From positions 868,001-932,000 of the forward strand of contig NW_025767048.1 in the NCBI RefSeq assembly GCF_003918875.1: 64,000 bases of DNA, written 5' to 3'. The number at the start of each line of letters is the position of its first letter. The first letter of the stretch is position 1. The position numbers and the translations under genes were made by a program. The notes under the pieces were generated by a model, which did not search any database, was not told the DNA's origin, and was given only the letters and a program-made list of their open reading frames with translations. Below, piece after piece: positions 11,427 to 58,869 of the stretch. This DNA comes from Haliotis rubra. Its lineage: Eukaryota.

Positions 11427-12440
11427 TATGTCCCCATGAACTCTTGACTTGTTTGTGCCTGCATGGGTGCCACTATGTGATAATGGTTTATGAACACATC
11501 GTTAGAATCGAACAATATATTCGTGTTATTGTTTAAATTATAGAATTTACACAGCCACGCGAAGGCAGAATATACCGACATTCTGCCTCTGAGCCTTTCT
11601 ATACTAGTATATCATGTAACACTGCAATATCAATTGCATTTATGTTACTTTAGTTATAAATACATATATCATAATAAATATGGTGGGACGTTTACAGGTA
11701 ACGTAGTGTATATGCAGATCGATGTACAATGAAACCCAAATATAATCGTCAGGATTAATATATTCATTTTGTATTCACGTAAGCGTTGCTAGTTGTAATC
11801 CTCCAAATGGTGAGCGTTCGATTGAACAGAATTAGGTATAACCGTTACGAGATTTCACACTTATAACTGTCTTTGAACGTAAGACAGAAACCCTCTTAAA
11901 TCAGATTGGTTGTGAAGTGGTGGAACCTTAACCCTGCTTGCCGTAAATGATTTCATTGTTTTAAATAACAAGGTGGAAAGGTTATCAGCTATTACGCTAA
12001 AGTTTTCATGGGAACATCTTACCATATATTGTACAAGTGAAAATACACCCGACAGACTTTTTCGGTAAATTCGTCTACATATCCCCAATGAAACGGTGTG
12101 AAATATGCATTGAGGCTTTGAAAGTTGTATTAAGGACTTACATTTGTATTAAAGCCTTGAAAGCTGCATTAAGGCCTTAAGGATGTAACTCTGATCAAAC
12201 AACTCTTGGCAACGTAATAATGGTCTTTGGCCACAAAAGGCTTAAAATCCTTGTGACATACAGAAGTTACAGGAAGTAGGAAAATTAAAGTCAGTCTTTT
12301 TGTCTCAAGCACTTGTGCGTCCTTGATGGCAAAATTCACACAGAGGAACAACGGAACAGCGAGTAGTATCCCTGTTTAGTCTTGAAAGCTTGCCAACTCT
12401 TATCAGCTTGAATACAAGGACGTGGGCGACAAGTCTTCTA

Positions 12441-15400
12441 TGCCAGAGAACCGATACATGGGACAGTTGTGGATGCAACTGGTTGACTTGGCAGGCCTGG
12501 TCGAATTGCTCGAGTAGATGTTATGGTGGACAGATACGCGAGAGGCTGGTGAATGTTCTCGACACGCCAGAATGTGGGACATTTGAACCCTGCGACGGAG
12601 GAAATGGGGCTTATGAAAGATGGGACTGCAACAAACACTGTGATGCAGGTCGCTATAATGGATATGGATGCTCCTGTCCTCTGGGAAGATATGGAGAATG
12701 CTGTGACAGCAGTAAGTATCACCTCATCTAAACATGTTACACATACCGTCAAGAACAGTGGCGCCTATACCAGGTAGCGAATTTAAATCAAGTTTTGTTT
12801 GTGGTTTAACTCATGACGTCAATCTGTATATAATCGAGTCAGACAAACCAGTGACATGCAAGTGAGTCAGCGATCCTGCGAGCGTGGGTTGCTGAAGAGT
12901 TTATCAACGTTACTCGTTGCTGCTCTTCTCAAAGGCATATGTTCATCGCACATTTTTAAGAGAAAAGTACTAAAGAACGAAAACTGCAATATAATAGAAT
13001 TACATTCGTGCTGCGTAAAGGTTGACTCGTTTTCTTTTAAGTTGTTACCTGTGCCAGGCCAGTGTCCATTCCACACGGAAACGTTCACGGGGGAAGGTTC
13101 CAGTATAATGACGTCATCACCTACACATGTGACACCAGCTTTAACCTGACAGGTCCCAACTAGAGGACCTGCATGGTTAACGGAGGCTGGAGTCGTTCTA
13201 CACCAAGATCTCTCTGTACGTATATCATTAAGCTGTGTTAGATATGAAAATAGTTGTGATTACTGGGTTGTTTGTTTAACGCCGAACTCAGCAATATTCC
13301 AGCTATATGACGCCAGTCTGTAAATAATCGATTATGGGCCAGGCAATCCAGTGATCAACAGCATGAGCATCGATCTACACAACTTGGTGTCAACCAAGTC
13401 ACCATATGTACACAACTTGGTGTCAACCAAGTCGCGGGTCGAAGCTTGTAGGGATGGATGACATTTAATCTACATGATCACGAAGCCTATTAACCCCCAT
13501 ACACGTATATTTGCCGTGTTTGAAGTAGATCTTGGGTTAGTTGGGACATGTTTGAATCCGGAAGCGTTGAAGTGCATCGACTTGTATTGCGTTGTTATCA
13601 TTCATGATATTGTAATGCCCCCGTAGTCGAGACTTTTTATCTAGTCGATGGTATCAACATTTTCTAAAGTGTACGTATGTCTTCATATCTGATATAATGC
13701 ACCTCTCACATACACCCTGTGCTGTTTCCAGTCGCCGAGTCGTGTAAGAGTGGTCCGTGTCAGAATGGTGGCACATGTGTGGATGGTCTGGACAGGTACG
13801 ACTGTGTCTGTGGAAGCGGCTGGACTGGGAAAAACTGTGATGTGGGTACGTTTAAGAAAACCATAAGCGCGAACATTTATACTGCATGATTCCCGATGTG
13901 GAAATAACCAGTTTATGTTCGTTTCAGATGTGCAAGCTCCAGTGGTTGACCAGTGTCCTCCTAGTGTTCGTTTGACTACTTCATCTCGTGAGATGACCTA
14001 CACATGGACAATTCCAGTCTTCTCTGATCCCCATGGCAACCTTGTGAAAACATTCTCTGATTATGACAGTAACACTTTCACCTTCCCCTGGGGAGACTTC
14101 ACCGTCCTCTATACTGCAGTGAAACCTAGCAACGGCCTTGAGACGAACTGCAGCTTCACAGTCAGCGTTAGACGTAAGGCCGCTTGTCGAATCGTTCGAC
14201 CCCAAGTGGCACTGGTCATAGATGTACATGTCCCAATCACTTACAAACTATCAACGATTGTGATGTTCATCTTGAACAGGGAGCAGTGGGGTAGCCTAGT
14301 GGTTAAAGCGTTCGCTTGTCACGCCGAAGACCCGGCTTGGATTCCCCACATGGGTTCAATGTGTGAAGCCCATTTCTGGTGTCCCCGCCGTGATATTGCT
14401 GCAATATTGCTAAAAGCGGTGTGACCTCACTTACTCATCTTGCACACACGACTTAACAGAAAGTAACAATAGTATGATATTAAGTGATTTGTCCTGTCAG
14501 AAAAGACACAACCTACAGTGATAATTTTATCAATGTGATTATTATTTCATTGTCATCACTCTTTTCTTGTCTGTTCCTTTTCATGGGACATGAAATATAC
14601 AATATATGTATTTATGTTCCGGATACAGCCAAACCGTGTCCACCCACTGTTGCCCCGAGCAACGGTTACGTCCTGTGTAACGGATGGAGAGCAGACTATG
14701 GGCAGTACTGTCTAGTTGGGTGCAACGCGAAGTACTCTCTCCCACGCAGTTTTGACGCGAGACAGTGGCTAGTGTGTGGCGCAAGTGGACACTGGGCTCC
14801 AGATTCTATTCCATTACGATGCAAAGGTGAGTGACACGATTTTCTACATGTGATTTATTCTCTTTTTCTATGTATTATTCCGTCATATTTGAAAGCACTA
14901 AACACACAATAATATTTTAAATGAATACAGTCACTTGCCAAATGATTAACAATGGTAGGCGGTGGGGTAGCCTAGTGGTTAAAGCGTTTGCTCGTCACGC
15001 CGAAGACCCGGGTTCGAATCCCCACATTGGTACAATGTATGAAGCCCATTTCTGGTGTCCCTCGCCGTGATGTTGCTGGAATATTGCTAAACGCGGCGTA
15101 AAAACAAACTCAGTCAGTCAGTTTAGGATCAAAACCACAATACGCCTTCTATTTAATATGGTTTTACGCCCTTTTCAGTAACATTATGCAATATCCTGGA
15201 CACCTGAAATGGGCTTTTCAATGTAACCATCTGGGGAATCGAACCAGGGTCTTCGGCGTGACGAGCGCTACTGGCGCGTTAAAGATATTAGCAGGTTGTG
15301 TTGTATTCGTTCCTGCATTATGATTGCTTCTTTTATACAGTCGGAGATGCAGGTGACCATGCTGTGGTAAAGCCTGGAGACTGTCTCAGCGGGACTCACA

Positions 15401-15513
15401 AACAAAAGGAAGACTACATCCATGCTCTCAAACGGTCGTCTTTCAACTCTGTGTGCACTGACAACCATACTATCTGCTCCCCTGACAATGTCAATGTTGT
15501 ATGCGGGGCATAG
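12441..15513 (+). pseudogene. Gene B: pseudogene copy of secreted TSP1-EGF-CCP-EGF-HYR-CCP protein
   Basis: Exons about 12441-12711, 13042-13215, 13732-13845, 13928-14173, 14629-14826, 15341-15513; AATAAA 15662. Acceptor, ATG and signal peptide are deleted relative to A and C; in-frame TAG at 13161-13163 (GAG in A and C); last sushi Cys changed to Ser. Confidence 0.85.
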
Positions 15514-37300: not shown

Positions 37301-40300
37301 ACAGCACGTGACGTTATTTCAGGGATTCTTCGTGTGGATTATATTAACTTGCTGATCTTAAACAGTTTGCATACTACTTACCTTTCTGCTGATTGTTTGC
37401 ACAAAGGATTCTATGATTCATTCTTTTTCTTTCGGACATATGAAGAGTTAGATGAAATAAGATGCAAATATTTGATAAAGGGAAAACATCCTTGAAGGCC
37501 ACTAATTTCCTATTATACATATTACATTTGCAACTGAAAGTGACAAAAGTCGGATTATTTACTTACGCGATTTATCTCTGAATACGAGCGATATGTTCAT
37601 GGGATTAAGACTGTCGGTGTTTGACGTCATCACAATGGCCACAGGGGCACCAGTGGAACGCTTTCTTCTGGTGGTGCCGGGACAGAATTCCACCCGAATC
37701 TGGCATGAGTTGTCCTTCGTGCAATTCAGAGTGTTTGTCTTGGCAAGGAGCTGTGTTGTCAGAGAGGACTTGGTTTGTTCACTGCTGTCACAGGCTAGAG
37801 ATGGGTACTCCATCTGGTGTTGGATGGTGAAGCCACGGGCACTTGATACAGCTAAACCGAACATAACAGTGAGTGAGTGAGTTTTGTTTTATGCGACTTT
37901 TAGCAATGTTCCAGCACTATCACGGCGGGGGACACCAGAGATGGGCTTCACACATTGTACTCATATGGGGAATCGAACCCGGGTCCCAACAAGCGAACGA
38001 TTTGACCACTAAGCTACCCCACCGTCCCCCGAACATTACAAGATGTCACGTAGGTATGTGATTCACGTTATTTAGATCCCTGATATTTAACACTACATTA
38101 TATTTGATATTTAACACAACATGCACATAGATTGAGGTATCTTTCGTAATTTCAACTATAATATTCCAGTATTACGTTTGCTTCGACAAATAATCGGATA
38201 CAGTAAAAATATATTATATTTTTTTCCAGTTTTAGAATCATGTAAGTCGTGTGATTAAGCATAAAAATGAAACAAATACTTTTAAAAGTAATTTTTAAAG
38301 TAATAGGTTAAAGTAAATGTTAAGGATGACTACTAATAGAATATTAAGGTAAATGTCGATGACTTGTTTACTATCTTTATGAATCCACGTGAATTTATAT
38401 GAACTTTAGTCTCCAACGACGGCTCCTCGACAACAATTTCGTTGAAGACTTGACAACCGACACAGACACCTTCACCGACACAGATAACTATCGATTAAGT
38501 CCTTATGAGCTACACACCAGAGCAGGCTGGCAGCCTTGCATGGGGGTTGTCCTCTGTTTGGTGGGTCCACATATAGTTGGTCTCCCTTCCACACTCGTAC
38601 AGCGGCAGCACCGGCTTGATGAACATCAGATCATCCCGACACGAGATGGAACACTGGATCAGGTCGGCAGTCGTGTTGCAGTGAGTCTGGACACCGTATG
38701 ACCTCGGCAGGTGACTACAAGCTGAAACGGCATTGCAACCTGTACCAGGGTATCAGTGATAAGGATCTTGTTTGCTATTTGCAATTTGATGTTTGAATTG
38801 TGTTAATGGCGCAGACCTAGAGCAAGAATGTGTAGAATATTATCCGTGGTCAGTGTAAGAAGCCCGGCCATTTTAGTCTCGTTATGTCGGTCAAAGTTTG
38901 AACTATTAAATGGTTATTAAAAAATATAAATATCCTGACCAAGAGTGTTTGGATAAACATGTTTACAATTCTAAACTGCTTCAGATGATATTTTAAGAAC
39001 ACTTTTATAAACAGTATGCAGTATTGAATTCTGAACTATGTTGAATGGGTTGTAGGATGGTTCCTTGAATGGGCGAGAGTTCAGAGAAGCAAGTTTAAAC
39101 TCTGTATGGAAGTATTTTGAAAATACCTGTGGCCGATTGAACGTTTATAGTCACTTTTTACCTGGACACTCATGTGCATTACAATTTTCGGACAAGGTGT
39201 CACTTCCTGCACACGGTCTTCCATCTGGGTCAGGTGAGGGACTGTTACACTTCCGGTTCCGGGTCATCACTCCTCCCCCACAGGTCACGCTACATTCACC
39301 CCAGTCGGACCATAAACTCCACCCACCGTTAACTTAAAACAGAAACAGACTGCAGGTTTATACATTATATAACTCATAAACTGGTTTCAGTGAAAATTGA
39401 CTTCACGTCACACATATTATATCACATATTAACACCTATTTACTAAGCAACTATTAATTTGGTGGATTGTTATATTTGAAATTACATGAAAACGTAGAAC
39501 GTGTCCAAGAAAGGTTCTAAGAAAGATTGCATTGCAAAAAGTACTGAAGAGTAATAATTATCCGGAAAGAACATATGAATAGGCTATTAAAATGTTGTGA
39601 AAAACATTTATGAAAATAATAATAGTAACTCTTTTCAGTTTTTGTGGTGAGAACATATCTCCCCACCTATAACCTCTTCACATAGTTGTCCCCGGTACCC
39701 CTGTCCGCAGACGCATGTGTATTTGGAGTAGTTGTTGACACACCTGGCCCCGTGTTGACAGCTGTGATGTCGACAGTGGTCAGGAGCTACCTCACACTGT
39801 CGTCCAGAGTACCCATGTGCACAGTCACACCTGTACCTGCCCACCTCGTTCACACAGGTGTGGTTGCCACAAGGACTCGACAGACATTCATTAATAGCTG
39901 CAAAAAGAAAGATTACTCATCACAATCTTCACTTTGATTGATATTAGGATTTTGTGTCATACTCTTGTGTATCAGACTGATGTATTTCCCAGGCGAACGA
40001 GCACGGAATAGTTGGAATATTTTTTGCAAGGCGTTTGGAAGGACTCAAAATCAAAATCATTTTAAACTGCCATTGCAACTGTGTGTTTTTTCAATCAGTT
40101 GGGAGTTGAGGGTATCAAAAATGGGACATCATATGCAATAATTTGCAATTGTTCTCTTACAATCACAAGTGCTGGGTACAATTAATCCCTCGGCGTTGGC
40201 CTCCATGGAAGAGTCGCGTACATGAACGCCACACCCGGAACTGACCTCCCCCACCTCACCTCCGGTCAAAATCCGTCCAACAATGTTGAGGCTACTGATG

Positions 40301-43300: not shown

Positions 43301-46300
43301 TCTATGCATAATGTTTTAGGAGTACATGTGTTGATGAAATGTGAAAAAATATAATTTAACTGTTCTGCACTTGAGTAGCATGTTCTTATCAAAACGTTTT
43401 TTCAAACATCAGTGGACTGACTACAAGACGGAAAATTGCCTTCATGAAAGCCTATTCTGCAAATCTAGAAACTAGTTGGAACTGGAATTTCAATCAGTAT
43501 TCCAATATTGCACAATAAAACACTAAACACTTACCACACGAAGCAGTGCGATAATTTGCTATCATGCCCTTCCCACAGAGAAAATTTGGAATGCCAGGAG
43601 CAAAGGAATCATCCTGCAGTTCTAGCCCTGGAACTCCAACATCGAGGCTTTTAGACTGAACAGCATTATCTATTGCAGCCTTGATTCTGTCGAATGAAGC
43701 TTCGCATGACTTGACGGTAACGCTGGAGTTTTGCCCGTTCTCTCTGTATGGCAATATGACGTTAAATTCAACTCTGACGTTGACTTTGGCGGCACGTTTA
43801 CGGCGAGATGTTTTACCGCATTTCACGCTGACGAACTCGGCCCTGCAGTCTGGGACAGTTCCACCACATTCTTCCTTGAACAAAGGATTGGCCTTGAGCA
43901 TCTTGATGAAGTTCTCCCTAATCTGTTGGTTTGCTGTGGCATCAGGACAGTTACCACTGTAGTAATACAGCTCGGATGGCATCATCATGGATCCAGGGCG
44001 TCGCTTCACTAATGAAATCATACATGGTCTTATCAGGTATTTATCCATGAATTACTTAATATATCGGAACAATTAAATTGTTTTATTTCACTCTGCTGTC
44101 GACACTTCATACCGGATCTAATGCCCCAAGACCATGATAGTTTTTGGAGTTTTTCTGTAATCTCACGTCACTCATTCCTACGTCAATCATGAATTCAATG
44201 ATTAATTGAAGAATTAAAAAGTTGGAAAAATCCCTTTGAACCAGATGCAGAAATTCCCTTTGAACCAGATGCAAAGGATATTAGTTATATATATTCTAAT
44301 CTTTACTCTCAGCAAGATAACACGATGAAGCACATGTTAACATACCAGTACAGTCCTGAATGTCGTCACTGGGGCGCCAAGTTCCGTCTGATTCTCCACA
44401 AACATACTGGGCGGGCACTTTTCTCGGCACATCGAACTTCTCATTACACTGCATCTGGCACATCTTCCCATGATTCCATCGATCACATGCTAGGGCGCCA
44501 TTCAAAGGTTGCCTGAGGTCCGGGCAGTTGTTGACTGACGGAAAACAAGCAGTGAAGGGACTAATTCAACAAACAATTGAAAACCAGATGCAGGTCTAAC
44601 AATTTCAAGATACTGAAGCAGCTGGGAACTTATTTCCATAATTAACTGGTTGACCTCAACAATATCTACCTATTTTCAGCTTTGATCCCAATTTTTGTCT
44701 AGCGTGGCATGACTTCCAGATTTAGAGAGTCAATTTCGTACAACATAAAACAGAAATTTCCAAGTCATATTTCCATGTGTTGTAAAGTCATTTAAACCAC
44801 CGCTTTTTTCTACTCTTTGTCTGACAGTGGTGAACCCAAGAATCATTACAAATGGTTACTAATACTTCAACTAAATCAACTATGTCTGCTTCAGAGCAGC
44901 ACCCATTCTTATTAGAGATGATGAACTTGGATCGTTTCTGTTCAGGAGTCAGAAGACTTGGAACATGGCGATTTAAAGCCTTGATCAACATCAGTTTATC
45001 CCTGTCCCATGAGACAGGACTGCTGTATTGGATACGTGGTATATGGTGAGTTCTCGATCATCTTTAGTCAAAAATTGTATTTTATCAAAATGACATTTGA
45101 AGGAATTCGTAATGTTAGATTATTTTAAAGCCCCGCTATAATAACTCCATTGTCTTGAAGATGAAATGTCATCACCATCAGTCTGATTAGATTGTATTCA
45201 CATATACCCATTTCATCGGGTACCCAAAATGTTTGGACCTAGTAAACAACAAAATACCTCGACCTTCATTTCCAAACCATTGTATATCAGACAATCGCCA
45301 TGGACAATCATTGTGAGGTATAACACAAGGGTTTACCGGCTAACAGTATAATTACAACAAATACCTCTATTACTCACTTTTACAGTAGGGTTCAATAGTA
45401 TCAGCTGGCCATGTCCAGTGAACTCTTGGGGGCGTTCAGAACCAGGTCTTTCATCGCACAAAATCCTGCTTGAACCCTCCAATGGGTAGCCAGACTTGCA
45501 GGACATTGTGCAGGTGTCTCCATAGGTCATGCCATCAGAACATGAGTACAACAGAAGATCTCTTCCAGACTTGTCTAATTTGGGGTCGTCACAAACAAGA
45601 CCTGAAGTATAATGAAAAATTCACAATAATTTCTTTGGGTATTTCAAATTACATTGTGTTGTTGATTGGCAGTTAAGCATTTACATGCTCTGTGATAATC
45701 TATGATTTTACACCGTTTCCTACATTTGTTATTGGCGTATAATATTTCACGTCATGATACGGCAAAGATAGTGATGATGTGACATTTTTTATTCACTCAC
45801 TCACTCAAACTACTAGAATAAACTAGTAGGGGTAAATGATAAATGACTTTATGATAAATGTAAAAAAACATTTTCAAAAAAATTTCACATTTCCAAACAC
45901 ATGCTGAAACATCAACACGTTAGATCGAAATATGACCAAGAATGAAACCCCTCTTTGAATAATCAAATTAGATCCTTGTGGGAAAAGCAATTATGTCTTA
46001 ATCCATGTTCCTAAGAATGAACTATCATTTCGTTTATCAGGTATGCACTCACTTTGGATTTTAACTGTGAAGCTGCAAGATGCTGTGTTTCCGTCTTGAT
46101 CAGTAGCAACAACACGGACAGGAGTTCGACCAGGAGAGAAGACAGACCCGGAAGACGGAGTGCTCTTCACTGTTGGGGCTACTCCAGAGTTGTCCTTGGT
46201 TGCTGGGTCTGCCCAATGAACCATCCTTGCACCACCTTTTTTCTCAGCATACTTTTCAACGTCAAGGGGACAACCATCAACAAACTCTGGTGGTTTTGTA

Positions 46301-49300
46301 TCTAAACACATCAGATAGTAACTTAATTTGTTGCACTAATGTACACACATTGGTGGGAGTTTGATGAAGTACAGTAAACGATACATACGCTTAAAAGGAA
46401 ATCTAAGAAACCACTAATTTCAGTTAGTTATAGCCGTAGTTCTTTATATGCATGTTGATTAAACCATACAACACGTGGTCAGTTCATTATATGCGTAGTA
46501 TTATAATACTTTGTAATATTGTTCATTTAATGAGGGCTAACGAATATTTATCGAGTTATACATTCCTTGAGCTGAGTACCAATGCAGTTTCATGGAAACG
46601 ATACGATGTTACTAATATAATATAAGCGTCTGAATCGACCTAACCTGTGGGTATTGTGCATACCTATGCATTTTCCAGGTAGTGAGAACTCTCCCTTCTT
46701 GTTGCAAATGACCATTGATGGTCCTTCAATTGAGAAACCCCTTTTGCAAGATAGTGTACACAAAGTCTTGAATGTTGGCGGATTCCCCATGCAATAGACA
46801 TTTCCGTTCGTCACATTTGGTATTGTCGGACACTCCTTTTCTGTAAAATACTAGTACATTTTACTTACATATACGTATCCTGCTTTGTACAATTTGCCTC
46901 TAACCTTTCATATCCATAAACCTCAAAGTGAAAACAGCTGAAAATAGCCACCAATTTGGGGTACAATTCCTTCGATCTTTCTCTTACTTCAGTTGAACAC
47001 GAAAGACATAGCCATAATATGGCCCAATCAGCTTGAACCAGCACAAAGAACTAGAGAACCTAACTTAATAAAGCTTTCCGGTCGTGTTTAATTCTACCTC
47101 GTCATAGGTATGAAATCACTATGGAGTCACGTGAGAAGAGACCGCGTGCTTAATCTTTTTCATTCTTTTTCGAGGTGAGCAGACGCTGTTCACCTTTCTT
47201 CATATAAAGCGGTAGATGAACTCAGAACCTGGTTCATCTAGTTCGTTATTTTCTTAGTTTGTTGAAACTATCGCGTGCTTAATCTTCATTTTTTAAAGCT
47301 GTGAATGGACACATATCCACCACAACATACTCAATCCAAAATGGGAGGGTACATAATACCGGGTGGGCAGATGACTCCTCCGTTCCTGAACTATAACTCG
47401 GTAGAACTACAATCAAAGTTCACCTTACAGGTAAGTCTCGTTTGATTTATCAATTAATCGTGCATGTGAGAAACTGCCGAATCGTTATGTTAGATAGCTT
47501 TCACATGTTTGGGGTTTACAGCTAACCTGTACACTCGAAAGTAGCACTCCATTTCTCCTTGTCACAGACTGACTCAGTCACATTATCTGCCTCGTATCCC
47601 TCATCGCAGTACAGCTTACAGGTTGACCCAGAGATCTCTCTCTTGTCGCACTCCACTCGCCCTGTGCTCGGCCAGTGGATCGGGGAGCATCGTTGCACTG
47701 GATTTATAATATATTACAATCACTTTATTAAAGATGGTTTTTTTGTGTGAGCCATGACACGTCAAGGAGAAAGAACTGGGAATTATTAAAAATCAAAATC
47801 TGTATAGCGGAAGAAGACCAAATCCTTGTCCTAAAAATTATTTATTTCGTTTAGAAATGATTTGTGTACACATTCTACGTTTAATCATGCAAACAGTTAG
47901 AATTACTTTAACCAAGACATAATATCTACAGTAAATTAGACCTTAGTTTGAGCAAACCTTTTACTGTGAATTGTATGCTACAAGATGCAGAAAGCCCTCC
48001 TTTGTCCACGGTCTTGTATTGTATGAAATGGGTACCTTCGTCAAACACACTTCCAGGATCTTTTCCCATTATCTGTTGCACTCTTTGAGTTATGAAATGT
48101 TAAGAGGGTTTAAGTTATATATTACAGATTCAAATACAAATTTAGCAGATGAGGTACGGGCGGTCCTGTTATAGTCAAGCTGCACAGGCTCACCCTGATA
48201 CTTTAACAGCCAGACTGGCCATTCCCATAATCAGCTTCAATCCCTTACCCCTCTATCCAGAGAGTGAATGACATGAACGCCCTATCTATTTGGTCCAACA
48301 AAGAACGTTTCGGGGAATATAAAGACTCCACAGCACTGCAGCCTTCTGCATTAAACCGTGTCAAAAGGGATGTGACAGCATATTCACAACCGTCTGCAGG
48401 AAATAATTTCTAAACTTGAGACATCCAAACAGTAGCAATGTGATATAGATGAGGCCTTTAACTATTTTGATATGTTTTTAAAAGAAATGCACGACTATGA
48501 CGGCACTATGGAATGCTATGTGCAAGGCAGAGTGCTGTTGGTGTCGGAGTCGTGGTCGGACACGTCTGGAGTTGAAGGCTGAGTGTGTGCACACCCGGAC
48601 AGTGTTTGACAAAGCCGTTTAGCAAGCCAAGCGGATGTATAGGGAAAAGACCCTGCAAGACGTTGAAGAAATATGTCAATCAAGATCAAGTGAGTTTTGG
48701 AAGAAGATCGGCAAGGCTGGTGTTGGAAGTGCAAGAAGAAAACAGATTCCTATGGAGGTGGTTACTGAAGATGGATCGATATCCAGAAATAAGCCTGTTG
48801 TTTAGACACATGGACTGCAGCATACTCCACCCTTCTTAACAATAAAGTCGATGGAGAGGAAGGCAGTCGTTACAAACGTCAGCCCCCGCCTTAATAACGC
48901 AATAACACTTCAGGAGATACGCCATGTTCTACTCCAAGCCCAAAAAGGTAAAGCACGATGGCATACAAGTGGAAATGCTAAAGAATGAAGAAGCTCTCAC
49001 GTTTCTACACAATTCCTTTAATCTGTGGTTTAGAAATAGGAAAGTTCCAACTGGATGATCGAAAGGAATTCTCAACCCCATACTAAAGTCATATACAGAT
49101 GATCCTCGCGACCCTTTGTCATACAGAGGAATAACACTAGCACGTTCGCCTTACAAGCAATACTGTGGAATTTTAAACAATGGGCTTTCTGGGCATGTTG
49201 AAAACCGTGATATACTAGATGATGAGCAGAACGGCTTCAGAAGAGGAAGATCAACCATAAAACATGTATCAGCTATAGAGACCAGGAAAAGTATTGGCCA

Positions 49301-52300
49301 ACAGACATTCGCAGCTTTCGTGGACTTTAGGAAAACTTACGACTGTATAGATAGAAGTATTCTATGGAAAACGTTGCAGAATATTGGAATTGAAGGGAAA
49401 ATGTCTAATGCCACCGTTTCGCTTTACCATAATGTAAAGTCATACGTGCGGATAAGCGGGTCAAGTACGCCCTGGTTTCGGGTCAACAGTGATCTACGTC
49501 AAAGATGTCTGCTTTTTCACTCCTACTATTCAACCTGTACATCAACAACCTGATATCAACCCTAACGCCTCTGACATCGGCATACCTGTTGACGACAAGA
49601 GCATAAGCGTCCTAGCCTACGCCGATGATATCATTCTACTGGCCTTGATCGAAGTTGACGTGAATACACTTCTAGAGGGACTCAGTCAGTGGTGCCAGGT
49701 AAACAAGATGTCTGTCAACCCAGAGAACACAAAGGTCATACATTTTAGAAGCCAAGCAGTAGAAAGAACAGATGTGATATTTCAGTGTTGAGACAAGATC
49801 TTAGAGATAGTATAAAGCTACAATTACCTCGGCCTGCTCTTGACAGAGCATATGAACTACACCCGGATGGGAAATGCAGTGGTAGGTGCAGCAAGCAGGG
49901 CATTAGGACTCCTCATATCAAAGTGTAAAATCCTAGGAGGCATGCAGCACAAGACTTTCACCATGCTTTACGACTCCATGGTATGGGCTACTATCGACTA
50001 CGGTGCTGCAATATGGGGAACTTATCATATCCCAGCCATAAACGTTGTTCACAACCGAACTATGACGTACTAATGGGCGTGAGGAAGTTTACGCCGAAGA
50101 GTGCTGTATCAGGTGATATGGGATGGGTGCCACCGGTTGTCCGGCGATGGAAGAGTGTTGCTCGATTTTACAAGCGATCATGCGATCAGAACCCGAACAG
50201 ATTATCTTCTAATGTGTTCAAATGGGCCCATTCTAAGTCTGTGCCTAGTAAGCGGAACTGGCATCAACGTGTACACAGGAAATTTAGAAGTTTAGATCTT
50301 GAACATTTTATCCCAATTGGAAATACGTTTAACATACGCTTTTTAATATCAGAGTTTGAACAGAAAGTGATGCAAAACTTTTTACAGGAGTGGAGTGTTG
50401 CAGTCAATCAGGAGAACAGTAACCGGTCAGGACGGGAAGAAAAGTTGCGACTGTATGGTAACAGTCCTATGGAGTTGAGCCGCATCTACAGAGTGACCTC
50501 CCTTGGTCGTATCGCCGAGCACTGGCAATGATCCGCTTTGGAGTCGCCCCGCTACGTGTTGAGACAGAACGATACACCAACATGACCCTGAACCAACGTG
50601 TGTGTTTTAATTGTAATGAGTGCGTTGAGGGTGAATGTCATGTTTTGTTCCAATGCCTACTTTATTTTGAGGTTACAAACAGTCTTTTAGTCAAATATGA
50701 AGAAATATGTTATAATTTTAAATGTTTGAGTATCATGTCCGAGGTTGAGATGTTTTATTTAGCAGCCAAAACCTGAAATATTTTATTGGAAAAACGGCAA
50801 GGTATTTTATGTCATTGTGGGTAGTCCTTTTTCTAAGAGTTTTTATATATAAAGTTGGATTTGGAAGCATATTTTAATACTGCAGATGTGAATTGTGAAC
50901 ATTGTCCCTCAAGGAATCAAAAGGATTTTTGACTCAATATCCTTATCTACACCAATGTCATCTATTGTATAAACTTTGCACTTTATTATGCACTTTGAAT
51001 ACGACTATCGTTTATCACGTCTTCTGCCTACCCTTTGCTGCCATCTTCTGGATCTGTAGCAGTAGGTGGAGACCAAGTCACATGTGCTGTCGTCGCACCT
51101 GTCTCTGCTGTCACATCACTCACTCGTGGACACGTGATCGTTGGAGGTGTGTTTGGCGGGGAGCTCTCTGTCGTGAAACATCGTAACTGATAATATGGAC
51201 ATGTTTGTTGTTTTCTTTAAGTTGGGGGCTTGTGATTTCGTTAAAAACCCTGTATGTCAGAATACTGACATAGAGAAAGACCGCATGTGGACAGTGGTAC
51301 ATTCTGTTCATATAATGTTAACTAAATGACACAAAACATGCAATTCTTTTACAGAGATCTAGAAACAGTGTATATACGTTTACAAATCGGCACAATATCT
51401 AAATATTGAGATTAAAACGAACAAAACCTTCAGAATATAATTATCAGGATCTTACTTTCGCAAACAAACATGCAGACGGCTTGTGCTATTCCTGTAATTA
51501 GTCCAGTTACTGCCCCCATTATTGGCGCTACATACTGGATTTGACGTTTGTGTCTGGTTATAGCATTGTGTTTCAGGTCGTCGTGTGCTGAAATAATGTA
51601 TCACACGGTCATTATTACCATGCAAACTCAACAATATGGCAACCAGGCATATTATTTGTGTGTGATAATACATGTATAATTACTCTTTTTGTCTCAACAT
51701 TCTATTTAGTCAGTTTGTATTTCTTATTAACGTTCAGTTACGAAAATGAATCACCGTGTGTCCACGTGGTATCTTCGTTACATAGCATGACTCGCATGGT
51801 TCCTGGAAATCTACATTTGGTTCCTGGAAGAACACTCTTGGTAACGGAGTCGGTTTTAGGAAACACATCCTTGTCACAAGACCCATCAAACGACTCTGGC
51901 AAACTGCATCCAATATATGTAGCCTGTGTAATCAAAAGAAAACAAAAACGTCAAATTTAGCTTACCAAATTCTTTAGTGAAATCCTGGGACCATTTTCGC
52001 ATAAAGGCGGGACCGGTTAGACTATAAATAGATGAACGTTTGTATTTAAAAGTTTCATTAAGGTTAATCTACATTCATCGACTATCATAACTGCTCTGTT
52101 TAGGTGCTTAAGAGATTATGAATCGTAATCTGAATAACAGGTTCAGAATATACAGCATATAAAACAATATTTTTATATACGTGCCAATTTCAGTTTAATG
52201 TTACACATCTGTGTTATTATGTAATGATTTCAAATATTCCCTTCGTGAGGTCAAATGGTAAGATGGAATGTATCATACCTGAGTGATATTTGTATGAATC

Positions 52301-52347: not shown

Positions 52348-53765
52348 GACAGCCCTGCAAACAGCAAGATCATGTAAGCAGAAAAAATCAGATAGTGAGT
52401 GAGTGAGTATGTGATTGAGTGATCGAGTGAGTGAGCGAGTGAGTAGGATTTTACTATAACGTCGGTTTACACTATAACAGTAACATATATTTATTATCGT
52501 ACATATAATACATCAAAATATCAATCGACATACGTACGAACCCTAAAATCATTCAAAAACACATAAACTTCTAAAACTTAGCTACCAATTACATTGCCTC
52601 GTGCCCTGCCCGCATATATATGTAAATGAACATGAAATTCATCCAAATTAGATCACATATTTTATGAAATATCATTGCTTTGAAAATATTAGCAGCAACA
52701 TGTACTAACCGTGTTCTTCGGTGACCATATGTGGTACGTGCGAGAACAGCGCAAATGTATACCTGTAAGATTTGACTGCTTGCCAGCTTTTAACAGGTAA
52801 CCTCCCACTGATTTGCATAACCGGTTTAGGAAACACCTGTGATAAGGTACAAGCAAAATCTGGCAGTCACTGAAGTTTTAACATGAAAGATTTTAGTCAC
52901 GGGCGTAATTAAACACATTCCTCCCACCGTGTGTATTTTAAGCAATGAAATAATGTAACGCCAATAAGGGTTAAGGCTCAACCACTTATGTTCCTACGTT
53001 CAAAGACAGTTATAAGTGTGAAACCTTGTTATACCGAATCCTGTTCATTCGAAACGGCCACCATTCGGAAGATTAGAGCTTGCAACACACACATGAATAT
53101 GTTAATTTAATTTGGGTTTGACTGTAAATGTACAGTTTATATATATTCATAACTAAAGTAACACAAATTCAATGGTTATTCCACAAATGCAAATTCTGCC
53201 TTCGCATGGCTGTGTAGAATTACACCTCTTCTATAATTCAAACAATAGCACGAAATCATTGTTTGATTCCAACGATATCAAAGAATGTATTCATGAACTA
53301 CTATCAAATAGTGGCACCCCTGCAGGGACAACCAAATCAAGTGTTCACGGGAACATATTACTATATATTGAACAAGTGAGTGAGTGTGAAACGGTGTAAA
53401 ACGTGAAAAGCTGTATTAAGGCCTTATATCAGTATTAAGGCCTTATAGCTGTATTGGGACCTTAAGACTGTAACCCTCATCAAACATCTCATGACAACGT
53501 ATGACGGTCTTTGGCCGCAAAAAGATTTGAGATCCGAGTGACATACAGATGTTTCATTGTGACTTTTGTAAAGGTGAAGTCAGTCTTTTGGTCTTACGTA
53601 CTTATGGGTCCTTGATCGTAACATACACATAGAGGGACAATGGACCAGCCTGTAATATCCCAGTGTAGCTTTGAAAGCTTGCCAACTCTTATCAGCTTGG
53701 TGTTTTGATTTTACGAGTTAGCACTACCAGTCTGCACAAACCAAGAGTTCATTGCAGGTGTAACC

Positions 53766-56700
53766 ATGCTGTGGTTGATCTTGATCGCCGTCATTCCTAT
53801 CACTACATGCCAGAGAGCCGACACATGGGACAGTTGTGGATGCTACTGGGAGACATGGCAGGCCTGGTCGAAGTGCTCCAGTAGATGTTATGGCAGACAG
53901 ATACGTGAGAGGAGGGGTGTTTGTTGACACCAGACCAGAATGTGGGACATTTGAATCCTGCGACAGAGGAAATGGGGGTTGGGACAGAAGAGACTGCAAC
54001 AAACACTGTGATGCAGGTCGCTACAATGGGCAAGGATGCTCCTGTCCTCTGGGAAGATATGGAGAATGCTGTGACAGCAGTAAGTATCACCTCATCTAAA
54101 CATGTAACACATACCCTCAAGAACAATGGCGCCTATACCAGGTAGCGAGCTTATGTTTTGTTTTGTTTTGCTTGTTGTTTAATTCCGCAATATTCCAGTT
54201 TTATGACGACAGTCTGTAACTAATCGAGTCAGACAATCCATAGGAATGCATCAAGTCAGCGATCCTGTTTACGTATGTTTCTAGTTGCTGCTCTTCTCAA
54301 AGCCTATCTATCTATCTGTCAAAAGTACAAAGGTACGAAAACTGCAATATAACAGAATTACATTCGTGCTGCGTAATGTTTGACTCGTTTTCTCTTTAGT
54401 AACGACCTGCGCCAGACCAGTGTCTATTCCATACGGAAACGTTCACGGGGGGAAGGTTCCAGTATAATGACGTCATCACCTACACGTGTGACACCAACTA
54501 TAACCTGACCGGTTCCTACGAGAGGACCTGCATGGTTAACGGAGGCTGGAGTCGTTCTACACCAAGATGTCTCTGTATGTATAGCATTAAGCTGTGTTAT
54601 ATTTAGAGAATAACCCAAGAGGTACCAGTGATGACAGGAAATATGTCCCTCGTGAAATTAATAAATGAATAAAAAATCATCTTGCAGTATCGTTCGATAT
54701 CATTTCCGGCTACACTTTTAGTGTACACCTTGCAAGTTCTATTTCACCATGTTTAGTCTCTTTCACATGTACACGCGAAAGGAATTTAGTGGATGTATTA
54801 TTCTCGTTCCACGTCCAGCAATGAATACGTCCACCTTGACCAGGTCATTGACGTTGATTGCAGTTAACTGGGTAGCCTTGTTTGTTTACAAAATACGGTT
54901 AGACATTTTTTTACTATAAAACACGTTGTTAAGTAAACGACGTCATATTGTTAATGACGTATGAAATGAAGCATTAAATAAGCATCAAAATCGAAAACCT
55001 GTATGTTTCTTGTTGATATTTTAAAATCTCGAATCACTGTGATTACATTATTATTATTATTATTAAATTAGTTCCGGCATCCAATAAAAATGTACAAATA
55101 TACGATCGACCAAACAACGTCGAGAATCAATAAATTGCACATTGTGCAACTATCAAAAAGATATTACACGGGGTCTCCTCGCCCGTTTGGGTAATAAATG
55201 AAAATAATCATGATTGCTGCATTTAATTATAGCTGTGATGAAGGTTTGTTGTTTAACGCCACATTCAGCAATATTCAAGCTATATGACGGCGGTGTGTAA
55301 ATAATCTGGACCAGACAACCCAGTGATCAATAGCATGAGCATCATTATACACAATTGGGATACAATGACATGTTTCAACCACCCGATCTCGTTAGTCGCC
55401 TTTTACGACAAACATGGCCCGGGTTGCTGAAGACCAGTTCTAATCTAATCTTAACGAGTCGAAGCTTTTACATGTAGGTATGGATGACATGCACTCAACA
55501 AAACTACGATTCCTGAAACCCGGATACATACAAGATCTTGGTTTAGCTGGGACTTGTTGGAATCCGGAATCTCTGCCGTTGAAGTGCATTGACTTGCATT
55601 GTGTTGTTATCCTTCATGATATTGTAATGTTCCTGTAGTCGAGACATTTTATCAGCATTTTCTGAAGTGTATGCATTTCTTCATATCTGATATAATGCAC
55701 CTCTCACATATGCCCTGTTCTGTTTCCAGTCGCCGAGTCGTGTAGGAGCGGCCCGTGTCAGAATGGCGGCACATGTGTGGATGGTCTGGCCAGGTACGAC
55801 TGTGTCTGTGGAAGCGGCTGGACTGGGAAAAACTGTGATGTGGGTAAGTAGGTTTAAGAAACAGACTGCTATTCCACAAAAACTGCATAAGCATTAGCAT
55901 TGAAACCATACTCGTTAACACAGGTAAACTGCCTTTAGCATAATTGCTAATGTTCGTTTCAGATGTGCAAGCTCCAGTGGTTGACCAGTGTCCTTCTAGT
56001 GTCCGTTTGACTACTTCATCTCGTGAGATGACCTACACATGGACAGTTCCTGTCTTCTCTGATCCCCATGGCAACCCCGTGAAAACGTCCTCTGATTATG
56101 ATAGCAACAATTTTACTTTCCCCTGGGGAGACTTCACCGTCCTCTACACTGCAGTGAAACCCAGCAACGGCCTTGAGACGAACTGCAGCTTTACAATCAG
56201 TGTCAGACGTAAGGCCGCTTGTTGAATTGGTCATAGATGTATCACGCCGAAGACCTGGGTTCGATTCCCAACATGGGTAAAATATGTGAAGCCCATTTCT
56301 GGTGTCCCCCGCCGTGATATTACTGGACTATTGCTTAAAGCGGCGTAAAACTAATTCACTGATCTTGCAACAGAAAGTAACAATAGTCTGATATTAAGTG
56401 ATCTGTCCTGACAGCCAACAGTGATAATTGTATCAATGTAATTATTATTTCAATGTCTTCGATCTTTCTTATCTTTTCTTTTCATGGGATACATATACAA
56501 CGTATGTATTTATGTTCCGGGTACAGCCAAACCGTGTCCACCCATCGTTGCCCCGAGCGACGGTTACGTCCTGTGTAACGGATGGAGAGCAGACTATGGG
56601 CAGTACTGTCTCGTTGGATGCAACGCGAACTACTCTCTCCCACGCAGTTTTGACGCGAGACAGTGGCTAGTGTGTGGCGCAAGTGGACACTGGGCTCCAG

Positions 56701-57242
56701 ATTTGTTTCCACTACGATGCAAAGGTGAGTGACACGAATTGTATATTCTCGTCAGTCACATTTTATTAAACACACAAGAATATTTTAAATTACCACAGTG
56801 ACTTACCATATAGTTTACAATGTTATATGTCCAGGATTAGAATCACAATACGCCTTATATGTAGTATGATTTTACGCCGTTTTAACCATATTCCATCAGA
56901 ATCATGGCGGGGGTCACCAGAAATGGGCTTCACACATTGCACCCATATGGGGATTCGAACCCGGGTCTTCGAGCGAACACTTTAATCGCTGGGCTGCTGC
57001 CACGTTAATGATATTAGCAGATTGTGTTCTATTCATACATGCATTATGATTGCTTCTTATTTTTCACAGTCGGAGATGCAGGTGGCCATGTGGTGTTGAC
57101 GCCTGGAGACTGTCTCAGCGGGACTCACAAGCAAAAGGAAGACTTCATCCATGCTCTCAAACGGTCGCCTTTCAACTCTGTGTGCATTGACAACCCTACT
57201 ATCTGCTCCCCTGACAATGTCAATGTTGTATGCGGGGCATAG
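53766..57242 (+). CDS. Gene C: secreted signal-TSP1-EGF-like / CCP / EGF / HYR / CCP / half SEA-like protein (about 405 aa if two +1 G frameshifts are errors, otherwise a pseudogene)
   Basis: Exons 53766-54079, 54400-54574, 55730-55843, 55963-56208, 56527-56724, 57070-57242. Exons 1 and 2 are each 1 nt longer than in A, from an extra G at 53914-53917 and 54447-54452. Confidence 0.75.
54600..55197. mobile_element. About 600-bp insertion unique to a C intron, probable non-autonomous transposon
   Basis: Absent from homologous A and B introns; weak inverted ends (atttag..aataaccc / gggtaataaat). Confidence 0.5.
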
Positions 57243-58869
57243 ATGGTGGGCAGATACGAATGTTATAATCAGATAAATTTCATATCTGACTATCGTCTGA
57301 ATGCTGATGAAATAATTGATAGAACTATTAAGAAAATATATTTTATTTGACAGTCGTAAACATAAAATGTATGGTATATTTTAGCAAATATAGCATTTAT
57401 TTTGATTGAACAGGAATTATTGGTGTGCTGCGTTGTTACCTTGATTTTCTATCTTCGGCTCATACCTTTTGGATGACATGTGCCTTGAAAAACATACTTT
57501 TTATAAGTAGTTATGCTTGACATGCACGTCACTATACGACACGACTTTAGTCCCAGGTTCGCCTCCCCAATCCATTAATCACATCTGACGTGCTGGCGTT
57601 AACAAAAAGAAGTAGCCATTACTCACATTTGATGAGTTGTCCTAAACAAAATAAGAAGCCATTACTCACATTTGACGTGCTGCCGTAAACTAAATAAGAA
57701 GCCATTACTCACATTTGATGTGCTGGCCTAGACAAATCAAGAAGCAATGACTCAGAGGTTGTTTCATAAAGGTTATAATAGTCAAGACCCCCAGTCAACA
57801 CTTCATATACAACATGGAAAAACGGCATCGCAAGACATATTACTTATACCCTCCATATAGTCATATATATCCATATCTAAATCATCGTTGTTTGTATAAT
57901 TATGTTTTCCCTTACGGCGCACCATACATTGGTTTCAGATATGCACGTGATAGATATATTTGCTTAATGACGAGCATCACGTGCAATACGCGTATCTGTC
58001 ATTATGCAAATATAAACGTTCAGTAAACTGTCCTTACAGATTAATAACATGGCAAATCAACAGTCTCTTTTGAGGATGGACGATCCTTTCCTGACAAGCT
58101 GTATGTAAAAACATCTATACCTTTAGAACATTAGCGAAGCATATATGTGCATCTTCAGCGGCTTAGGTGGCATGAGTGAAACATACTGACAACTTTTGTA
58201 TGAATTAACTAAAGGCATACTTGATTTTACCCAGAATCAAAGTGAAATGTGTGTCCAAAGTTAAGTGTGTCCAAAGTTCATGCAGTTAACATTTCGCCTA
58301 ATTACTTGTTTACAATGTTGAAAAAAGAATTGGCAAAATAGAACAGAACACATAAGGAAAAAAAAAGACTTGAAGAATACTTCATCCTTTATCATCCTGA
58401 ATTATTTCACAAACTGTGATTGGTTACAGACTCTTTGGACTACGTTTACCTTGGTAAATAATATATACTACTCAAAGTTCGCAAATGATCACCAGTTTCA
58501 ATGATATTACATCAACTGTATGCTTCCGGCGAAATAGCTAAATGAATGTTGAATGAATAAAAGTCTGCCGTCATGTACAAGTCAATGCCACATATAACTT
58601 GTGATCAATAGTAAGCCTGATCGTCCGTCAAAATGAGAGGATCTGAGAAAATGGAAACGTAAAAAAATTCAGAAAATAATAAAACACCTCTCATTTGTGT
58701 TTATGTGACCCACTTGATGTGTGGTCTCAAAGGTCAGTTCGAATATCTCTACATTTGATCGTGTCTGGGTTGAAGAAATCTGTACATTCTTTATAATCAA
58801 AGTCAGCACTCAACTTATTTCTCATATTTATTTTCTCAGAGAAAAGAAACGTAATTCTTTTATTCAGAG

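What the first reader, a model, noticed from the sequence alone, without database searches (positions are those of the whole stretch)
57070..57242. Secreted paralogs stop where the large protein has its furin site
Seen: the last exon of C and B (GDC..KQKEDFIHALK..VC..ICSPDNVNVVCGA*) aligns by eye with the first half of D exon 44008-43535 (GNC..QQIRENFIKMLK..EC..DCRAEFVSVKCGKTSRRKR). Both follow a similar W-x-x-x-G-x-x-C type CCP exon. Inference: the small genes encode a ready-made equivalent of a furin-released N-terminal fragment. Their half SEA-like domain might pair in trans with the complementary half left on cleaved D/E, giving swappable ectodomain heads or decoys.
Basis: inference. Interest (0 to 1): 0.78.

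Follow-up and report, generated by a model that had tools for sequence, protein, structure and literature searches.

The report
Secreted proteins ending in half-SEA module
A mollusc gene for a secreted protein stops inside a SEA-like module, three residues before the protease-cutting site that a neighbouring large receptor carries there; this short form is an old, conserved family, but nothing yet shows that it plugs onto the cut receptor.

Summary
The last exon of C (57070-57242) and of B (15341-15513) matches the first ~65 residues of D's exon 44008-43535. It ends at ..VVCGA*, three residues before D's RRKR. The pairwise signal is marginal. A family profile built without D, B or C scores them 25-26 bits, against 9 for the best of 10,000 shuffles.

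D's exon folds (AlphaFold2, pLDDT 82) as a beta-alpha-beta-beta-alpha-beta module with RRKR at the tip of the beta2-beta3 hairpin. Solved SEA and SEA-like domains are among its best structural matches. Pfam has no match.

The short form is not a recent truncation of D:
- At least six loci in this genome, plus oyster transcripts and other contigs, all stop 0-8 residues after the fourth cysteine.
- A tree separates short from long forms with 97/99 support.

C is intact: two apparent frameshifts are surplus G's in the assembly. Its splice joints appear in read contigs that behave like RNA. B is a decaying copy.

So "a ready-made equivalent of the furin-released head" is supported as architecture. 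Pairing in trans with the D/E stump remains untested. The central beta1 strand is degenerate in short forms, which argues mildly against it. The scan has noted this stretch before only as the same finding.

The parts
57070..57242 (+). Gene C, last exon: the four-cysteine N-half of the module (beta1-alpha1-beta2), stop at 57240-57242
   Evidence: Translation. Family HMM 25-28 bits. Splice joint 56724>57070 in run X3.
56527..56724 (+). Gene C, CNGW-type CCP (sushi) exon directly before the half-module
   Evidence: Pfam Sushi 22.4 bits. Joint 56208>56527. BLASTP E = 8e-10 to D's CCP. The same CCP precedes the half-module in L023, L059 and L060.
55963..56208 (+). Gene C, HYR exon
   Evidence: Pfam HYR 29.2 bits. 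Joints 55843>55963 and 56208>56527.
55730..55843 (+).
   Evidence: Pfam EGF 36.4 bits. Joint to the HYR exon in X3. Boundaries.
54400..54574 (+). Gene C, first CCP exon; the assembly has one surplus G in the G run near 54447
   Evidence: Translation. 'Left out 1' at 54447 in X1, X2 and X3.
53766..54079 (+). Gene C, exon 1: ATG, hydrophobic leader MLWLILIAVIPITTC, weak TSP1-like and Cys-rich stretch; the assembly has one surplus G near 53914
   Evidence: Alignment with A and B. 'Left out 1' at 53914 in all contigs of X1 and X2, which come from the assembly's own sample. TSP1_spondin 17 bits on A's copy, below cut-off.
15341..15513 (+). Gene B, last exon (N-half), 86% identical to C's in protein
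12402..14826 (+). Gene B, upstream exons (12402-12711, 13042-13215, 13732-13845, 13928-14173, 14629-14826). No ATG or leader, in-frame TAG at 13161-13163, last CCP cysteine replaced by Ser. A decaying copy.
43535..44008 (-). Gene D, complete ~140-aa SEA-like module in one phase 1-1 exon, running into the start of the next Cys-rich domain
   Evidence: Translation. AlphaFold2 pLDDT 81.8, beta-alpha-beta-beta-alpha-beta. Structural matches.
43794..43805 (-). D's RRKR (residues 68-71 of the exon), between strands 55-68 and 71-86 of the model
44299..44565 (-). Gene D, CCP exon (within this open frame) directly before the module, homologous to C's CNGW-type CCP
45994..46335 (-). Gene D, HYR exon (within this open frame) upstream of the CCPs
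   Evidence: Pfam HYR 63.8 bits.

Best explanation
C belongs to an old molluscan family of secreted CCP-EGF-HYR-CCP proteins; B is a decaying duplicate of it. The C-terminus of these proteins is a ~45-residue unit with four cysteines. That unit is homologous to the part of a ~140-residue SEA-like module that lies before the protease loop in large receptors such as D.

In D-type proteins a furin-type convertase would cut the beta2-beta3 hairpin. No conserved cysteine links the two halves, so the head (..HYR-CCP-CCP-N-half) would stay on the membrane stump only non-covalently and could be shed, as in Notch, mucins and GPR126.

The short family is that head made without its tether. It stops 0-2 residues (once 8) after Cys4, and in C three residues before the position of D's RRKR. 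Most likely it works as a constitutively soluble head: a ligand, decoy or opsonin acting through its HYR and CCP domains. Its terminal half-module, stapled by two internal disulfides, would serve as a structural cap.

Shown: the homology, the fold class, the conserved stop position, the age of the split, C's intact frame and its splicing. Inferred: secretion, furin cleavage, non-covalent association, the disulfide pairing and the soluble-head function.
For: Homology: a profile built without D, B or C scores C 25 bits and B 26.5, against 9 for the best of 10,000 shuffles. Only D, C and B hit the family HMM in the window.

Fold: AlphaFold2 pLDDT 81.8, pTM 0.76, strands 6-17, 55-68, 71-86 and 135-137, helices 23-49 and 94-117, with RRKR at 68-71. 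VIA-align Z 7.0-7.6 to SorCS2's membrane-proximal domain, TROP2's C-terminal domain, and the SEA domains of TMPRSS11D, MUC16, Gpr126 and TMPRSS6. The ESM Atlas gives TM 0.64 to mucin-3A.

Basic sites follow the 'CG' in most of the 14 paralogous modules. The C-half alignment has no invariant column, so no conserved cysteine there.

Conserved stop: L023/24/25 end ..NVNIRC*, L027 ..VRCR*, L050 ..AMC*, L049 C+8. P0001-P0008, P0014-P0018 and the M. gigas entries K1PMT3 and K1QF75 all end at Cys4 +0-2, except P0003, which has lost Cys4. The oyster-like transcripts L029 and L032 carry the stop followed by a 3' UTR.

Age: short and long forms are separated by one branch with 97/99 support.

C is real: the surplus bases at 53914 and 54447 are absent from read contigs, and GT..AG joints 55843>55963, 56208>56527 and 56724>57070 appear in X3 with no intron depth. 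dN/dS between B and C is 0.26. No C-half exon lies downstream of B or C.
Against: - Z of 7-7.6 is what many models reach without a true relative, and bacterial ferredoxin-like folds score equally.
- There is no sequence match to Pfam SEA or to any solved chain.
- Nothing here shows cleavage, secretion or a binding partner.
- The half alone folds at pLDDT 79 but loses its strands, so it may need a partner strand.
- The beta2 motif NVxVxC is the best conserved part of short forms although beta3 is missing in cis. That fits a partner as well as a cap.
- dN/dS of the last exon between B and C is 0.78 on few sites.
- X3 is only guessed to be RNA, and its contig over the last exon carries six differences from C.
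Confidence: 0.6

Rival explanations
1. Trans-complementation. The secreted N-half docks onto the beta3-alpha2-beta4 stump left on D/E-type receptors after furin cleavage and loss of their own head. This rebuilds the SEA-like fold and gives swappable heads or caps.
For: - The stop lies within about two residues of where a trimmed furin product of D would end.
- Helix alpha1 and the beta2 motif NVxVxC are conserved equally in short and long forms.
- The isolated half loses its strands in the model.
- All six short loci lie 13-94 kb from long-form genes D, L002 and L004/5, and these three form one clade.
- Precedent, from my own knowledge: secreted MUC1/SEC is reported to bind MUC1/Y (Baruch et al. 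1999, listed in the references of PMC5074479).
- Released SEA fragments have been proposed as diffusible ligands (PMC6954182).
Against: - The beta1 motif YYxGxC, which in a beta-alpha-beta-beta-alpha-beta fold is the central strand that needs beta3 and beta4 (order from general knowledge of the fold), is conserved in long forms but degenerate in short forms. Abalone forms read HVVLTPGDC and GGILGSPDSC.
- Short and long N-halves are only 21-28% identical and sit across a long branch.
- No orphan C-half gene exists.
- Linkage can be explained by tandem duplication alone.
Confidence: 0.2
2. Self-pairing. Two half-modules (beta-alpha-beta each) associate into a symmetric ferredoxin-like sandwich, so the tail acts as a dimerisation device for the secreted protein.
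For: - The ferredoxin-like fold is built from two beta-alpha-beta halves (general knowledge).
- The conserved beta2 edge and the hydrophobic face of alpha1 lack a cis partner.
Against:
- Nothing in the sequences points specifically to dimers.
Confidence: 0.15
3. Nothing functional. C and B are truncated, dying duplicates, or the gene model misses a downstream exon that completes the module.
For: - B lacks a start codon, has an in-frame TAG and has lost a CCP cysteine.
- The assembly shows two frameshifts in C.
- No canonical AATAAA or ATTAAA lies within 900 bases after C's stop.
- X3 has no depth beyond 57255.
Against: - Both frameshifts in C are absent from read contigs of the same sample.
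- The same stop position is kept in at least six loci here and in oyster-like transcripts with 3' UTRs.
- dN/dS is 0.26.
- No C-half exon lies downstream in the window, and none in the genome lacks its own N-half.
Confidence: 0.05

Closest known systems
Furin-cleaved SEA and SEA-like domains: human GPR126/ADGRG6 SEA and the Notch heterodimerisation domain (S1 site)
   Same: Extracellular beta-alpha-beta-beta-alpha-beta module with a basic R-x-K/R-R site in the beta2-beta3 loop; the halves are expected to stay together non-covalently until pulled apart (PMC6954182). Zebrafish Gpr126 SEA (6v55) matches the D model at Z 7.1 over 108 residues.
   Different: - No sequence similarity detectable.
- The N-half here carries four invariant cysteines.
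- Many paralogues have two basic sites flanking an excisable linker.
- To my knowledge no natural family that ends at the cleavage point is described for GPR126 or Notch.
Autoproteolytic SEA domains of mucins and type II serine proteases (MUC1, MUC16, TMPRSS11D, TMPRSS6; Pfam PF01390)
   Same: Same fold class and same cleaved loop. MUC16 and TMPRSS SEA domains are among the top structural matches at Z 6.3-7.2. Mucin-3A gives TM 0.64 in the Atlas. MUC1/SEC binding MUC1/Y is a precedent for a secreted partner of a SEA-bearing receptor (own knowledge; reference seen).
   Different: No G|SVVV self-cleavage motif and no Pfam SEA hit. Cleavage here would need a convertase.
Region before the Ephrin_rec_like repeats of vertebrate SCUBE1 and of ZPBP1/ZPBP2 (Pfam Sp38)
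   Same: These are the best predicted-structure matches to the D module: TM 0.66, 0.64 and 0.58 over 134-145 residues. As in D, the module there is followed by Ephrin_rec_like-type Cys-rich repeats.
   Different: This is a structure-only lead between two predicted models. There is no Pfam Sp38 hit at E <= 1. No profile-profile test was possible.
SVEP1/polydom-like mosaic proteins (CCP, HYR, EGF, Ephrin_rec_like, LamG/pentraxin-like, TSP1)
   Same: D's exons carry Sushi, HYR, Ephrin_rec_like, EGF and Laminin_G_3. A neighbouring plus-strand gene carries Ephrin_rec_like and TSP_1.
   Different: To my knowledge SVEP1 is not described with this cleavable module or with short partners that end inside it.

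Membership tests
SEA domain (Pfam PF01390) | Sequence match to the SEA profile | tested here: not met
   No Pfam family at E <= 1 for D's module or for C's last exon. The other six related modules scanned gave only unrelated matches far below cut-off. A profile search of PDB sequences found nothing relevant.
SEA domain (Pfam PF01390) | Ferredoxin-like beta-alpha-beta-beta-alpha-beta sandwich | tested here: met
   AlphaFold2 model with pLDDT 81.8 has this order of elements. SEA domains of TMPRSS11D, MUC16, Gpr126 and TMPRSS6 match at Z 7.0-7.2. Z in this range is also reached by unrelated ferredoxin-like folds.
SEA domain (Pfam PF01390) | G|SVVV-type autoproteolysis motif in the beta2-beta3 turn | tested here: not met
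   The turn reads CGKTSRRKRAAK in D and carries basic sites in most paralogues.
Convertase-cleaved SEA-like modules (Notch HD, human GPR126 SEA) | R-x-K/R-R site placed in the beta2-beta3 loop | tested here: met
   RRKR at residues 68-71 lies between strands 55-68 and 71-86. RTKR, RRRR, RRRKR, RKKR, RKRR and similar sites are in paralogues. GRKR is in an 85%-identical relative, P0021.
Convertase-cleaved SEA-like modules (Notch HD, human GPR126 SEA) | Actual cleavage, with the halves staying associated | not testable with these tools
   Needs protein work. The only indirect support is the absence of a conserved cysteine in the C-half.
Short-form family (HYR - CNGW-type CCP - N-half - stop), defined here | Four-cysteine N-half as the last exon, with the stop 0-8 residues after Cys4, preceded by a CNGW-type CCP | tested here: met
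   C and B; L023/25; L059 and L060; P0014 and P0016. For L027, L049 and L050 only the half-module and its stop were seen. The short clade has 97/99 support.
Sp38 / ZPBP and the SCUBE spacer region | Sequence or profile match to Sp38 (PF07354) | tested here: not met
   No hit at E <= 1. Only predicted-structure similarity, TM 0.58-0.66.
Sushi/CCP and HYR (flanking domains of C) | Pfam match above the gathering score | tested here: met
   Sushi 22.4 bits (cut-off 20.7), HYR 29.2 (21.7), EGF 36.4 (21.5).

The most novel reading that the evidence does not exclude
A natural split-domain system. Molluscs keep, side by side in the genome, receptors whose SEA-like module is cut by furin and a separate gene family that makes only the N-terminal half. 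Free heads could then dock onto vacated membrane stumps, or compete with the resident head. That would give combinatorial, exchangeable ectodomains without recombination.
Probability: 0.17. Interest if true: 0.85.

Novelty: new variant of a known kind. Interest (0 to 1): 0.6.

Why it matters
Cleaved SEA-type modules are known as breakable joints in Notch, mucins, dystroglycan and adhesion GPCRs. Here a divergent, cysteine-stapled version with no Pfam model is spread over at least ten genes of one mollusc genome. An ancient sister family consists of the head plus only the first half of the joint.

This gives a natural experiment on two questions. Can half of such a fold stand alone? Can released heads re-attach? 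It also defines an unannotated domain, and a conserved CCP + half-module ending, that would improve annotation of molluscan SVEP1/SCUBE-like genes.

If docking in trans were shown, it would be a new way to diversify cell-surface receptors. If not, the result is a tidy case of domain-boundary evolution.

Tried and rejected
- **Complex prediction**, C N-half with D's post-RRKR half: no verdict. Score 0.01, controls not run, my alignments not used. It counts neither for nor against binding.
- **Default BLASTP** of C's last exon against D's exon: nothing. The homology rests on profiles.
- **Foldseek against PDB**: only low-TM ferredoxin-like or RAMP matches, TM 0.3-0.44. Uninformative.
- **Profile search of PDB sequences**: nothing relevant.
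- **ESM Atlas by features**: weak. A SEA cluster appears at rank 3 with score 0.80, a lead only.
- **RNA runs**: none was listed. I relied on X3, labelled 'DNA?', whose contigs skip introns. The 3' end and poly(A) site of C could not be seen.
- **The search for homologous proteins** with region 270-337 of P0014 and with D's exon: almost nothing new, because of the word index and length window.
- **P0020**, which reads past the stop, is a gene call that takes TGA as Trp. Rejected as evidence.
- **Recent truncated copy of D**: rejected by the tree.
- **C as a frameshifted pseudogene**: rejected by the read contigs.
- **Membrane-proximal furin modules** at 37562-37864 (-) and 27441-27791 (+): they score only 7.5 and 3.8 bits with the family HMM, so I did not count them as members.
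- **Prokaryote-type promoter/terminator scan**: irrelevant here.
- **Literature search** on HYR, sushi and oyster: nothing on this family.

Full report
**What is there**

The window is a piece of a 1.38-Gb, intron-rich invertebrate genome.

The flagged exon, 57070-57242 on the plus strand, follows an AG acceptor in phase 1. It reads VGDAGGHVVLTPGDC..KQKEDFIHALK..VC..ICSPDNVNVVCGA and then a stop at 57240-57242. A second copy lies at 15341-15513, 86% identical in protein.

The exon it was compared with, 44008-43535 on the minus strand, is a single phase 1-1 exon of 158 codons. It contains ..SELYYYSGNC..QQIRENFIKMLK..EC..DCRAEFVSVKCGKTSRRKR|AAKVNVRVEF...

**Is the resemblance real?**

Pair against pair it is marginal. 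Default BLASTP sees nothing. A sensitive tblastn gives 36% identity over 47 residues at E = 0.001 within the window, the best non-self hit in both directions.

The genome holds about fourteen further copies of the D-type module. A profile built from thirteen of them, leaving out D, B and C, scores C's exon 25.1 bits and B's 26.5. The best of 10,000 shuffled versions scores 9.0. Among all 1,156 open frames of the window, only D, C and B match the family profile. The four cysteines are invariant across sixteen aligned members.

The exon in front is related too. C's CCP exon (56527-56724) and D's CCP exon (inside 44299-44565) align at E = 8e-10.

**What the module is**

Pfam has no model for it, and no solved chain is similar in sequence.

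AlphaFold2 on the paralogue alignment gives pLDDT 81.8 and pTM 0.76. The order of elements is strand 6-17, helices 23-49, strand 55-68, strand 71-86, helix 94-117 and a short strand 135-137. RRKR (residues 68-71) therefore sits at the tip of the beta2-beta3 hairpin.

An exhaustive structural comparison puts these among the ten best, at Z 7.0-7.6:
- the membrane-proximal domain of SorCS2;
- the C-terminal domain of TROP2;
- the SEA domains of TMPRSS11D, MUC16, zebrafish Gpr126 and TMPRSS6.

In the ESM Atlas the best matches are a region of SCUBE1, ZPBP2 and ZPBP1 (Sp38) and mucin-3A, at TM 0.58-0.66. Z values of this size are also reached by unrelated ferredoxin-like proteins. So I call the fold SEA-like and leave homology to SEA open.

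The position of the basic site is the loop that is cut in MUC1 (self-cleavage) and in Notch and human GPR126 (furin) (PMC6954182).

Most paralogues carry a basic site there. Several carry two sites flanking a linker, and two have long acidic, tyrosine-rich inserts. The C-terminal half has no conserved cysteine. A cut module would therefore be held together non-covalently; this is an inference.

**The short genes**

Read contigs from four public runs were laid on 53700-57500. Run X3 has depth on exons only and shows GT..AG joints 55843>55963, 56208>56527 and 56724>57070, so it behaves like RNA.

The two apparent frameshifts in C are surplus G's in G runs at 53914 and 54447. The one at 53914 is missing from the contigs of X1 and X2, both from the sample that best matches the assembly. 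The one at 54447 is missing from all contigs of X2 and X3 and from some of X1. They are assembly errors.

C thus encodes about 405 residues: a hydrophobic leader, a weak TSP1-like and Cys-rich stretch, then CCP, EGF, HYR, CCP and the N-half.

B has lost its start and leader. It also has an in-frame TAG at 13161-13163 and a Cys-to-Ser change in its first CCP, so it is decaying.

Between B and C, dN/dS is 0.26 overall and 0.78 in the last exon, on few sites.

No exon for the second half of the module lies downstream of B or C. Every second half in the genome has its own first half directly upstream.

**The stop is old and conserved**

Four more loci in this genome end the same way, with 0-8 residues after Cys4:

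| Locus | Ending |
|---|---|
| L023/24/25 | ..NVNIRC, then a double stop |
| L027 | ..VRCR |
| L050 | ..AMC |
| L049 | Cys4 plus 8 residues |

A CNGW-type CCP exon was seen upstream of L023/25.

A profile of the short forms, searched against 1.84 billion representatives, returned eight proteins. All but P0003, which has lost Cys4, end within two residues of that cysteine.

Relatives of one of them include:
- 337-residue products (CCP-EGF-HYR-CCP-half) of transcript-like contigs from three runs, with the stop followed by up to 667 bases of 3' UTR;
- two Magallana gigas UniRef entries, K1PMT3 and K1QF75.

Two contigs from other assemblies show the same CNGW-CCP exon followed by the half-module exon.

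In a tree of 31 N-halves, the 17 short and 14 long forms are separated by one branch with 97/99 support, and oyster short forms sit with the abalone ones. B and C are therefore not truncated copies of D. They belong to a sister family that presumably predates the gastropod-bivalve split. This is an inference, because no long forms from other species were in the tree and the root is unknown.

**How it probably works**

For D-type proteins I infer convertase cleavage at the hairpin, a non-covalently held head and possible shedding.

The short family is the same kind of head without the tether. C ends at the residue aligned with D's residue 65, three residues before R68. 'Ready-made equivalent of the released fragment' is a fair description of the architecture.

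Whether the free half docks on a vacated stump is open.

For docking:
- helix alpha1 and the beta2 motif NVxVxC are as conserved in short forms as in long forms;
- the half alone keeps its helix but loses its strands in a model with pLDDT 79;
- all short loci lie 13-94 kb from long-form genes D, L002 and L004/5, which form one clade.

Against docking:
- the beta1 motif YYxGxC, in this fold the central strand that needs beta3 and beta4 on either side, is conserved in long forms but degenerate in short ones;
- the two kinds of N-half are only 21-28% identical;
- genomic linkage is what tandem duplication gives anyway.

The one complex job returned no verdict.

My weights are: soluble head with a disulfide-stapled cap about 0.6, docking in trans about 0.2, self-pairing about 0.15, no function about 0.05.

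**Novelty**

Cleaved SEA-type joints are well known. Three things are new here: an unannotated, cysteine-stapled version expanded in a mollusc; its possible structural kinship with the region before the Ephrin_rec_like repeats of SCUBE and ZPBP; and above all a conserved gene family that ends at the cleavage point. I rate it a new variant of a known kind.

Noticed in passing
window 53914 and 54447: Two one-base surpluses in G runs of the assembly break C's reading frame. Read contigs lack them: at 53914 all contigs of X1 and X2, at 54447 all of X2 and X3 and some of X1.
   Followed up: yes
window 12402-15513 (+): B has no ATG or leader (the segment homologous to 53699-53807 is replaced), an in-frame TAG at 13161-13163 and a lost CCP cysteine. 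Yet its last three exons are open and under dN/dS 0.26 against C. This looks like recent decay or gene conversion.
   Followed up: partly
window 57145-57187: A third version of the last exon differs from C at six positions (F>Y, P>S, I>T in protein) and is intermediate between C and B. It appears in DNA contigs of the assembly's own sample (X2), in another sample (X4) and in the RNA-like run X3. It is an allele or an unassembled copy.
   Followed up: partly
L002, L003, L004, L015, L016 (G000 contigs C657, C2554, C507, C2822, C2282): Many paralogous modules carry two basic sites 7-25 residues apart in the beta2-beta3 loop (for example RTKR..VNKR, RRRR..RRRR, RRRKR..KVKR). Cleavage at both would excise a small linker peptide.
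   Followed up: no
L011 and L013 (G000:C1:863840-864016 and C1:987728-987907): Two modules have ~100-residue inserts after the fourth cysteine, rich in Asp, Glu and runs of Tyr (YYYY) and bounded by RRRR- or RKRR-type sites. They look like an excisable acidic, possibly sulfated, peptide.
   Followed up: no
window 37562-37864 (-) and 27441-27791 (+): A second kind of four-cysteine unit ends in a basic site (..EFCPGTTRRKR, ..DNCEGQQRKKR). It lies nearer the membrane end of D and in a plus-strand neighbour. The two match each other (E about 1e-5) but hardly match the family profile (7.5 and 3.8 bits). It may be a more distant version of the same cleavable joint.
   Followed up: partly
G000 contigs C2158, C657, C507/C2476: Short-form and long-form genes are linked in three separate genomic clusters (distances 13-94 kb). 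The three long forms involved (D, L002, L004/5) form one clade in the tree, which suggests that a short+long block was duplicated. C507 and C2476 look like haplotype duplicates.
   Followed up: partly
D model against the ESM Atlas: The best predicted-structure matches of the module are a region of vertebrate SCUBE1 and the Sp38 domain of ZPBP1/2, both next to Ephrin_rec_like-type repeats as in D. This may be an unrecognised SEA-like + Cys-rich supradomain shared with vertebrates.
   Followed up: no
window 56242-56360 and 56863-56983, also 14322-14419, 14995-15110 and many others: A tRNA-derived SINE-like repeat sits in inverted copies in the introns on either side of C's CCP exon, and likewise in B. 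Read depth there is in the millions.
   Followed up: no
window 32982-34018 (-) and 49116-50776 (+): An ORF of Tc1/mariner transposase type (judged by eye) lies just beyond D's 3' end, and ORFs of reverse-transcriptase type (by eye) lie inside D's 5' introns.
   Followed up: no
window 8904-10291 (-) against 53432-54602 (+): Gene A shares its first exons (leader/TSP1-like exon and first CCP) with B and C at 81-88% DNA identity and then diverges. An X3 contig joins exon 1 to the first CCP exon with letters (TTGT) that fit B and differ from C; A's junction was not checked.
   Followed up: partly
P0020 (Logan contig): A database protein seems to read past the conserved stop of an oyster short form. 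It is a gene call that translated TGA as Trp, so it is an annotation artefact.
   Followed up: yes
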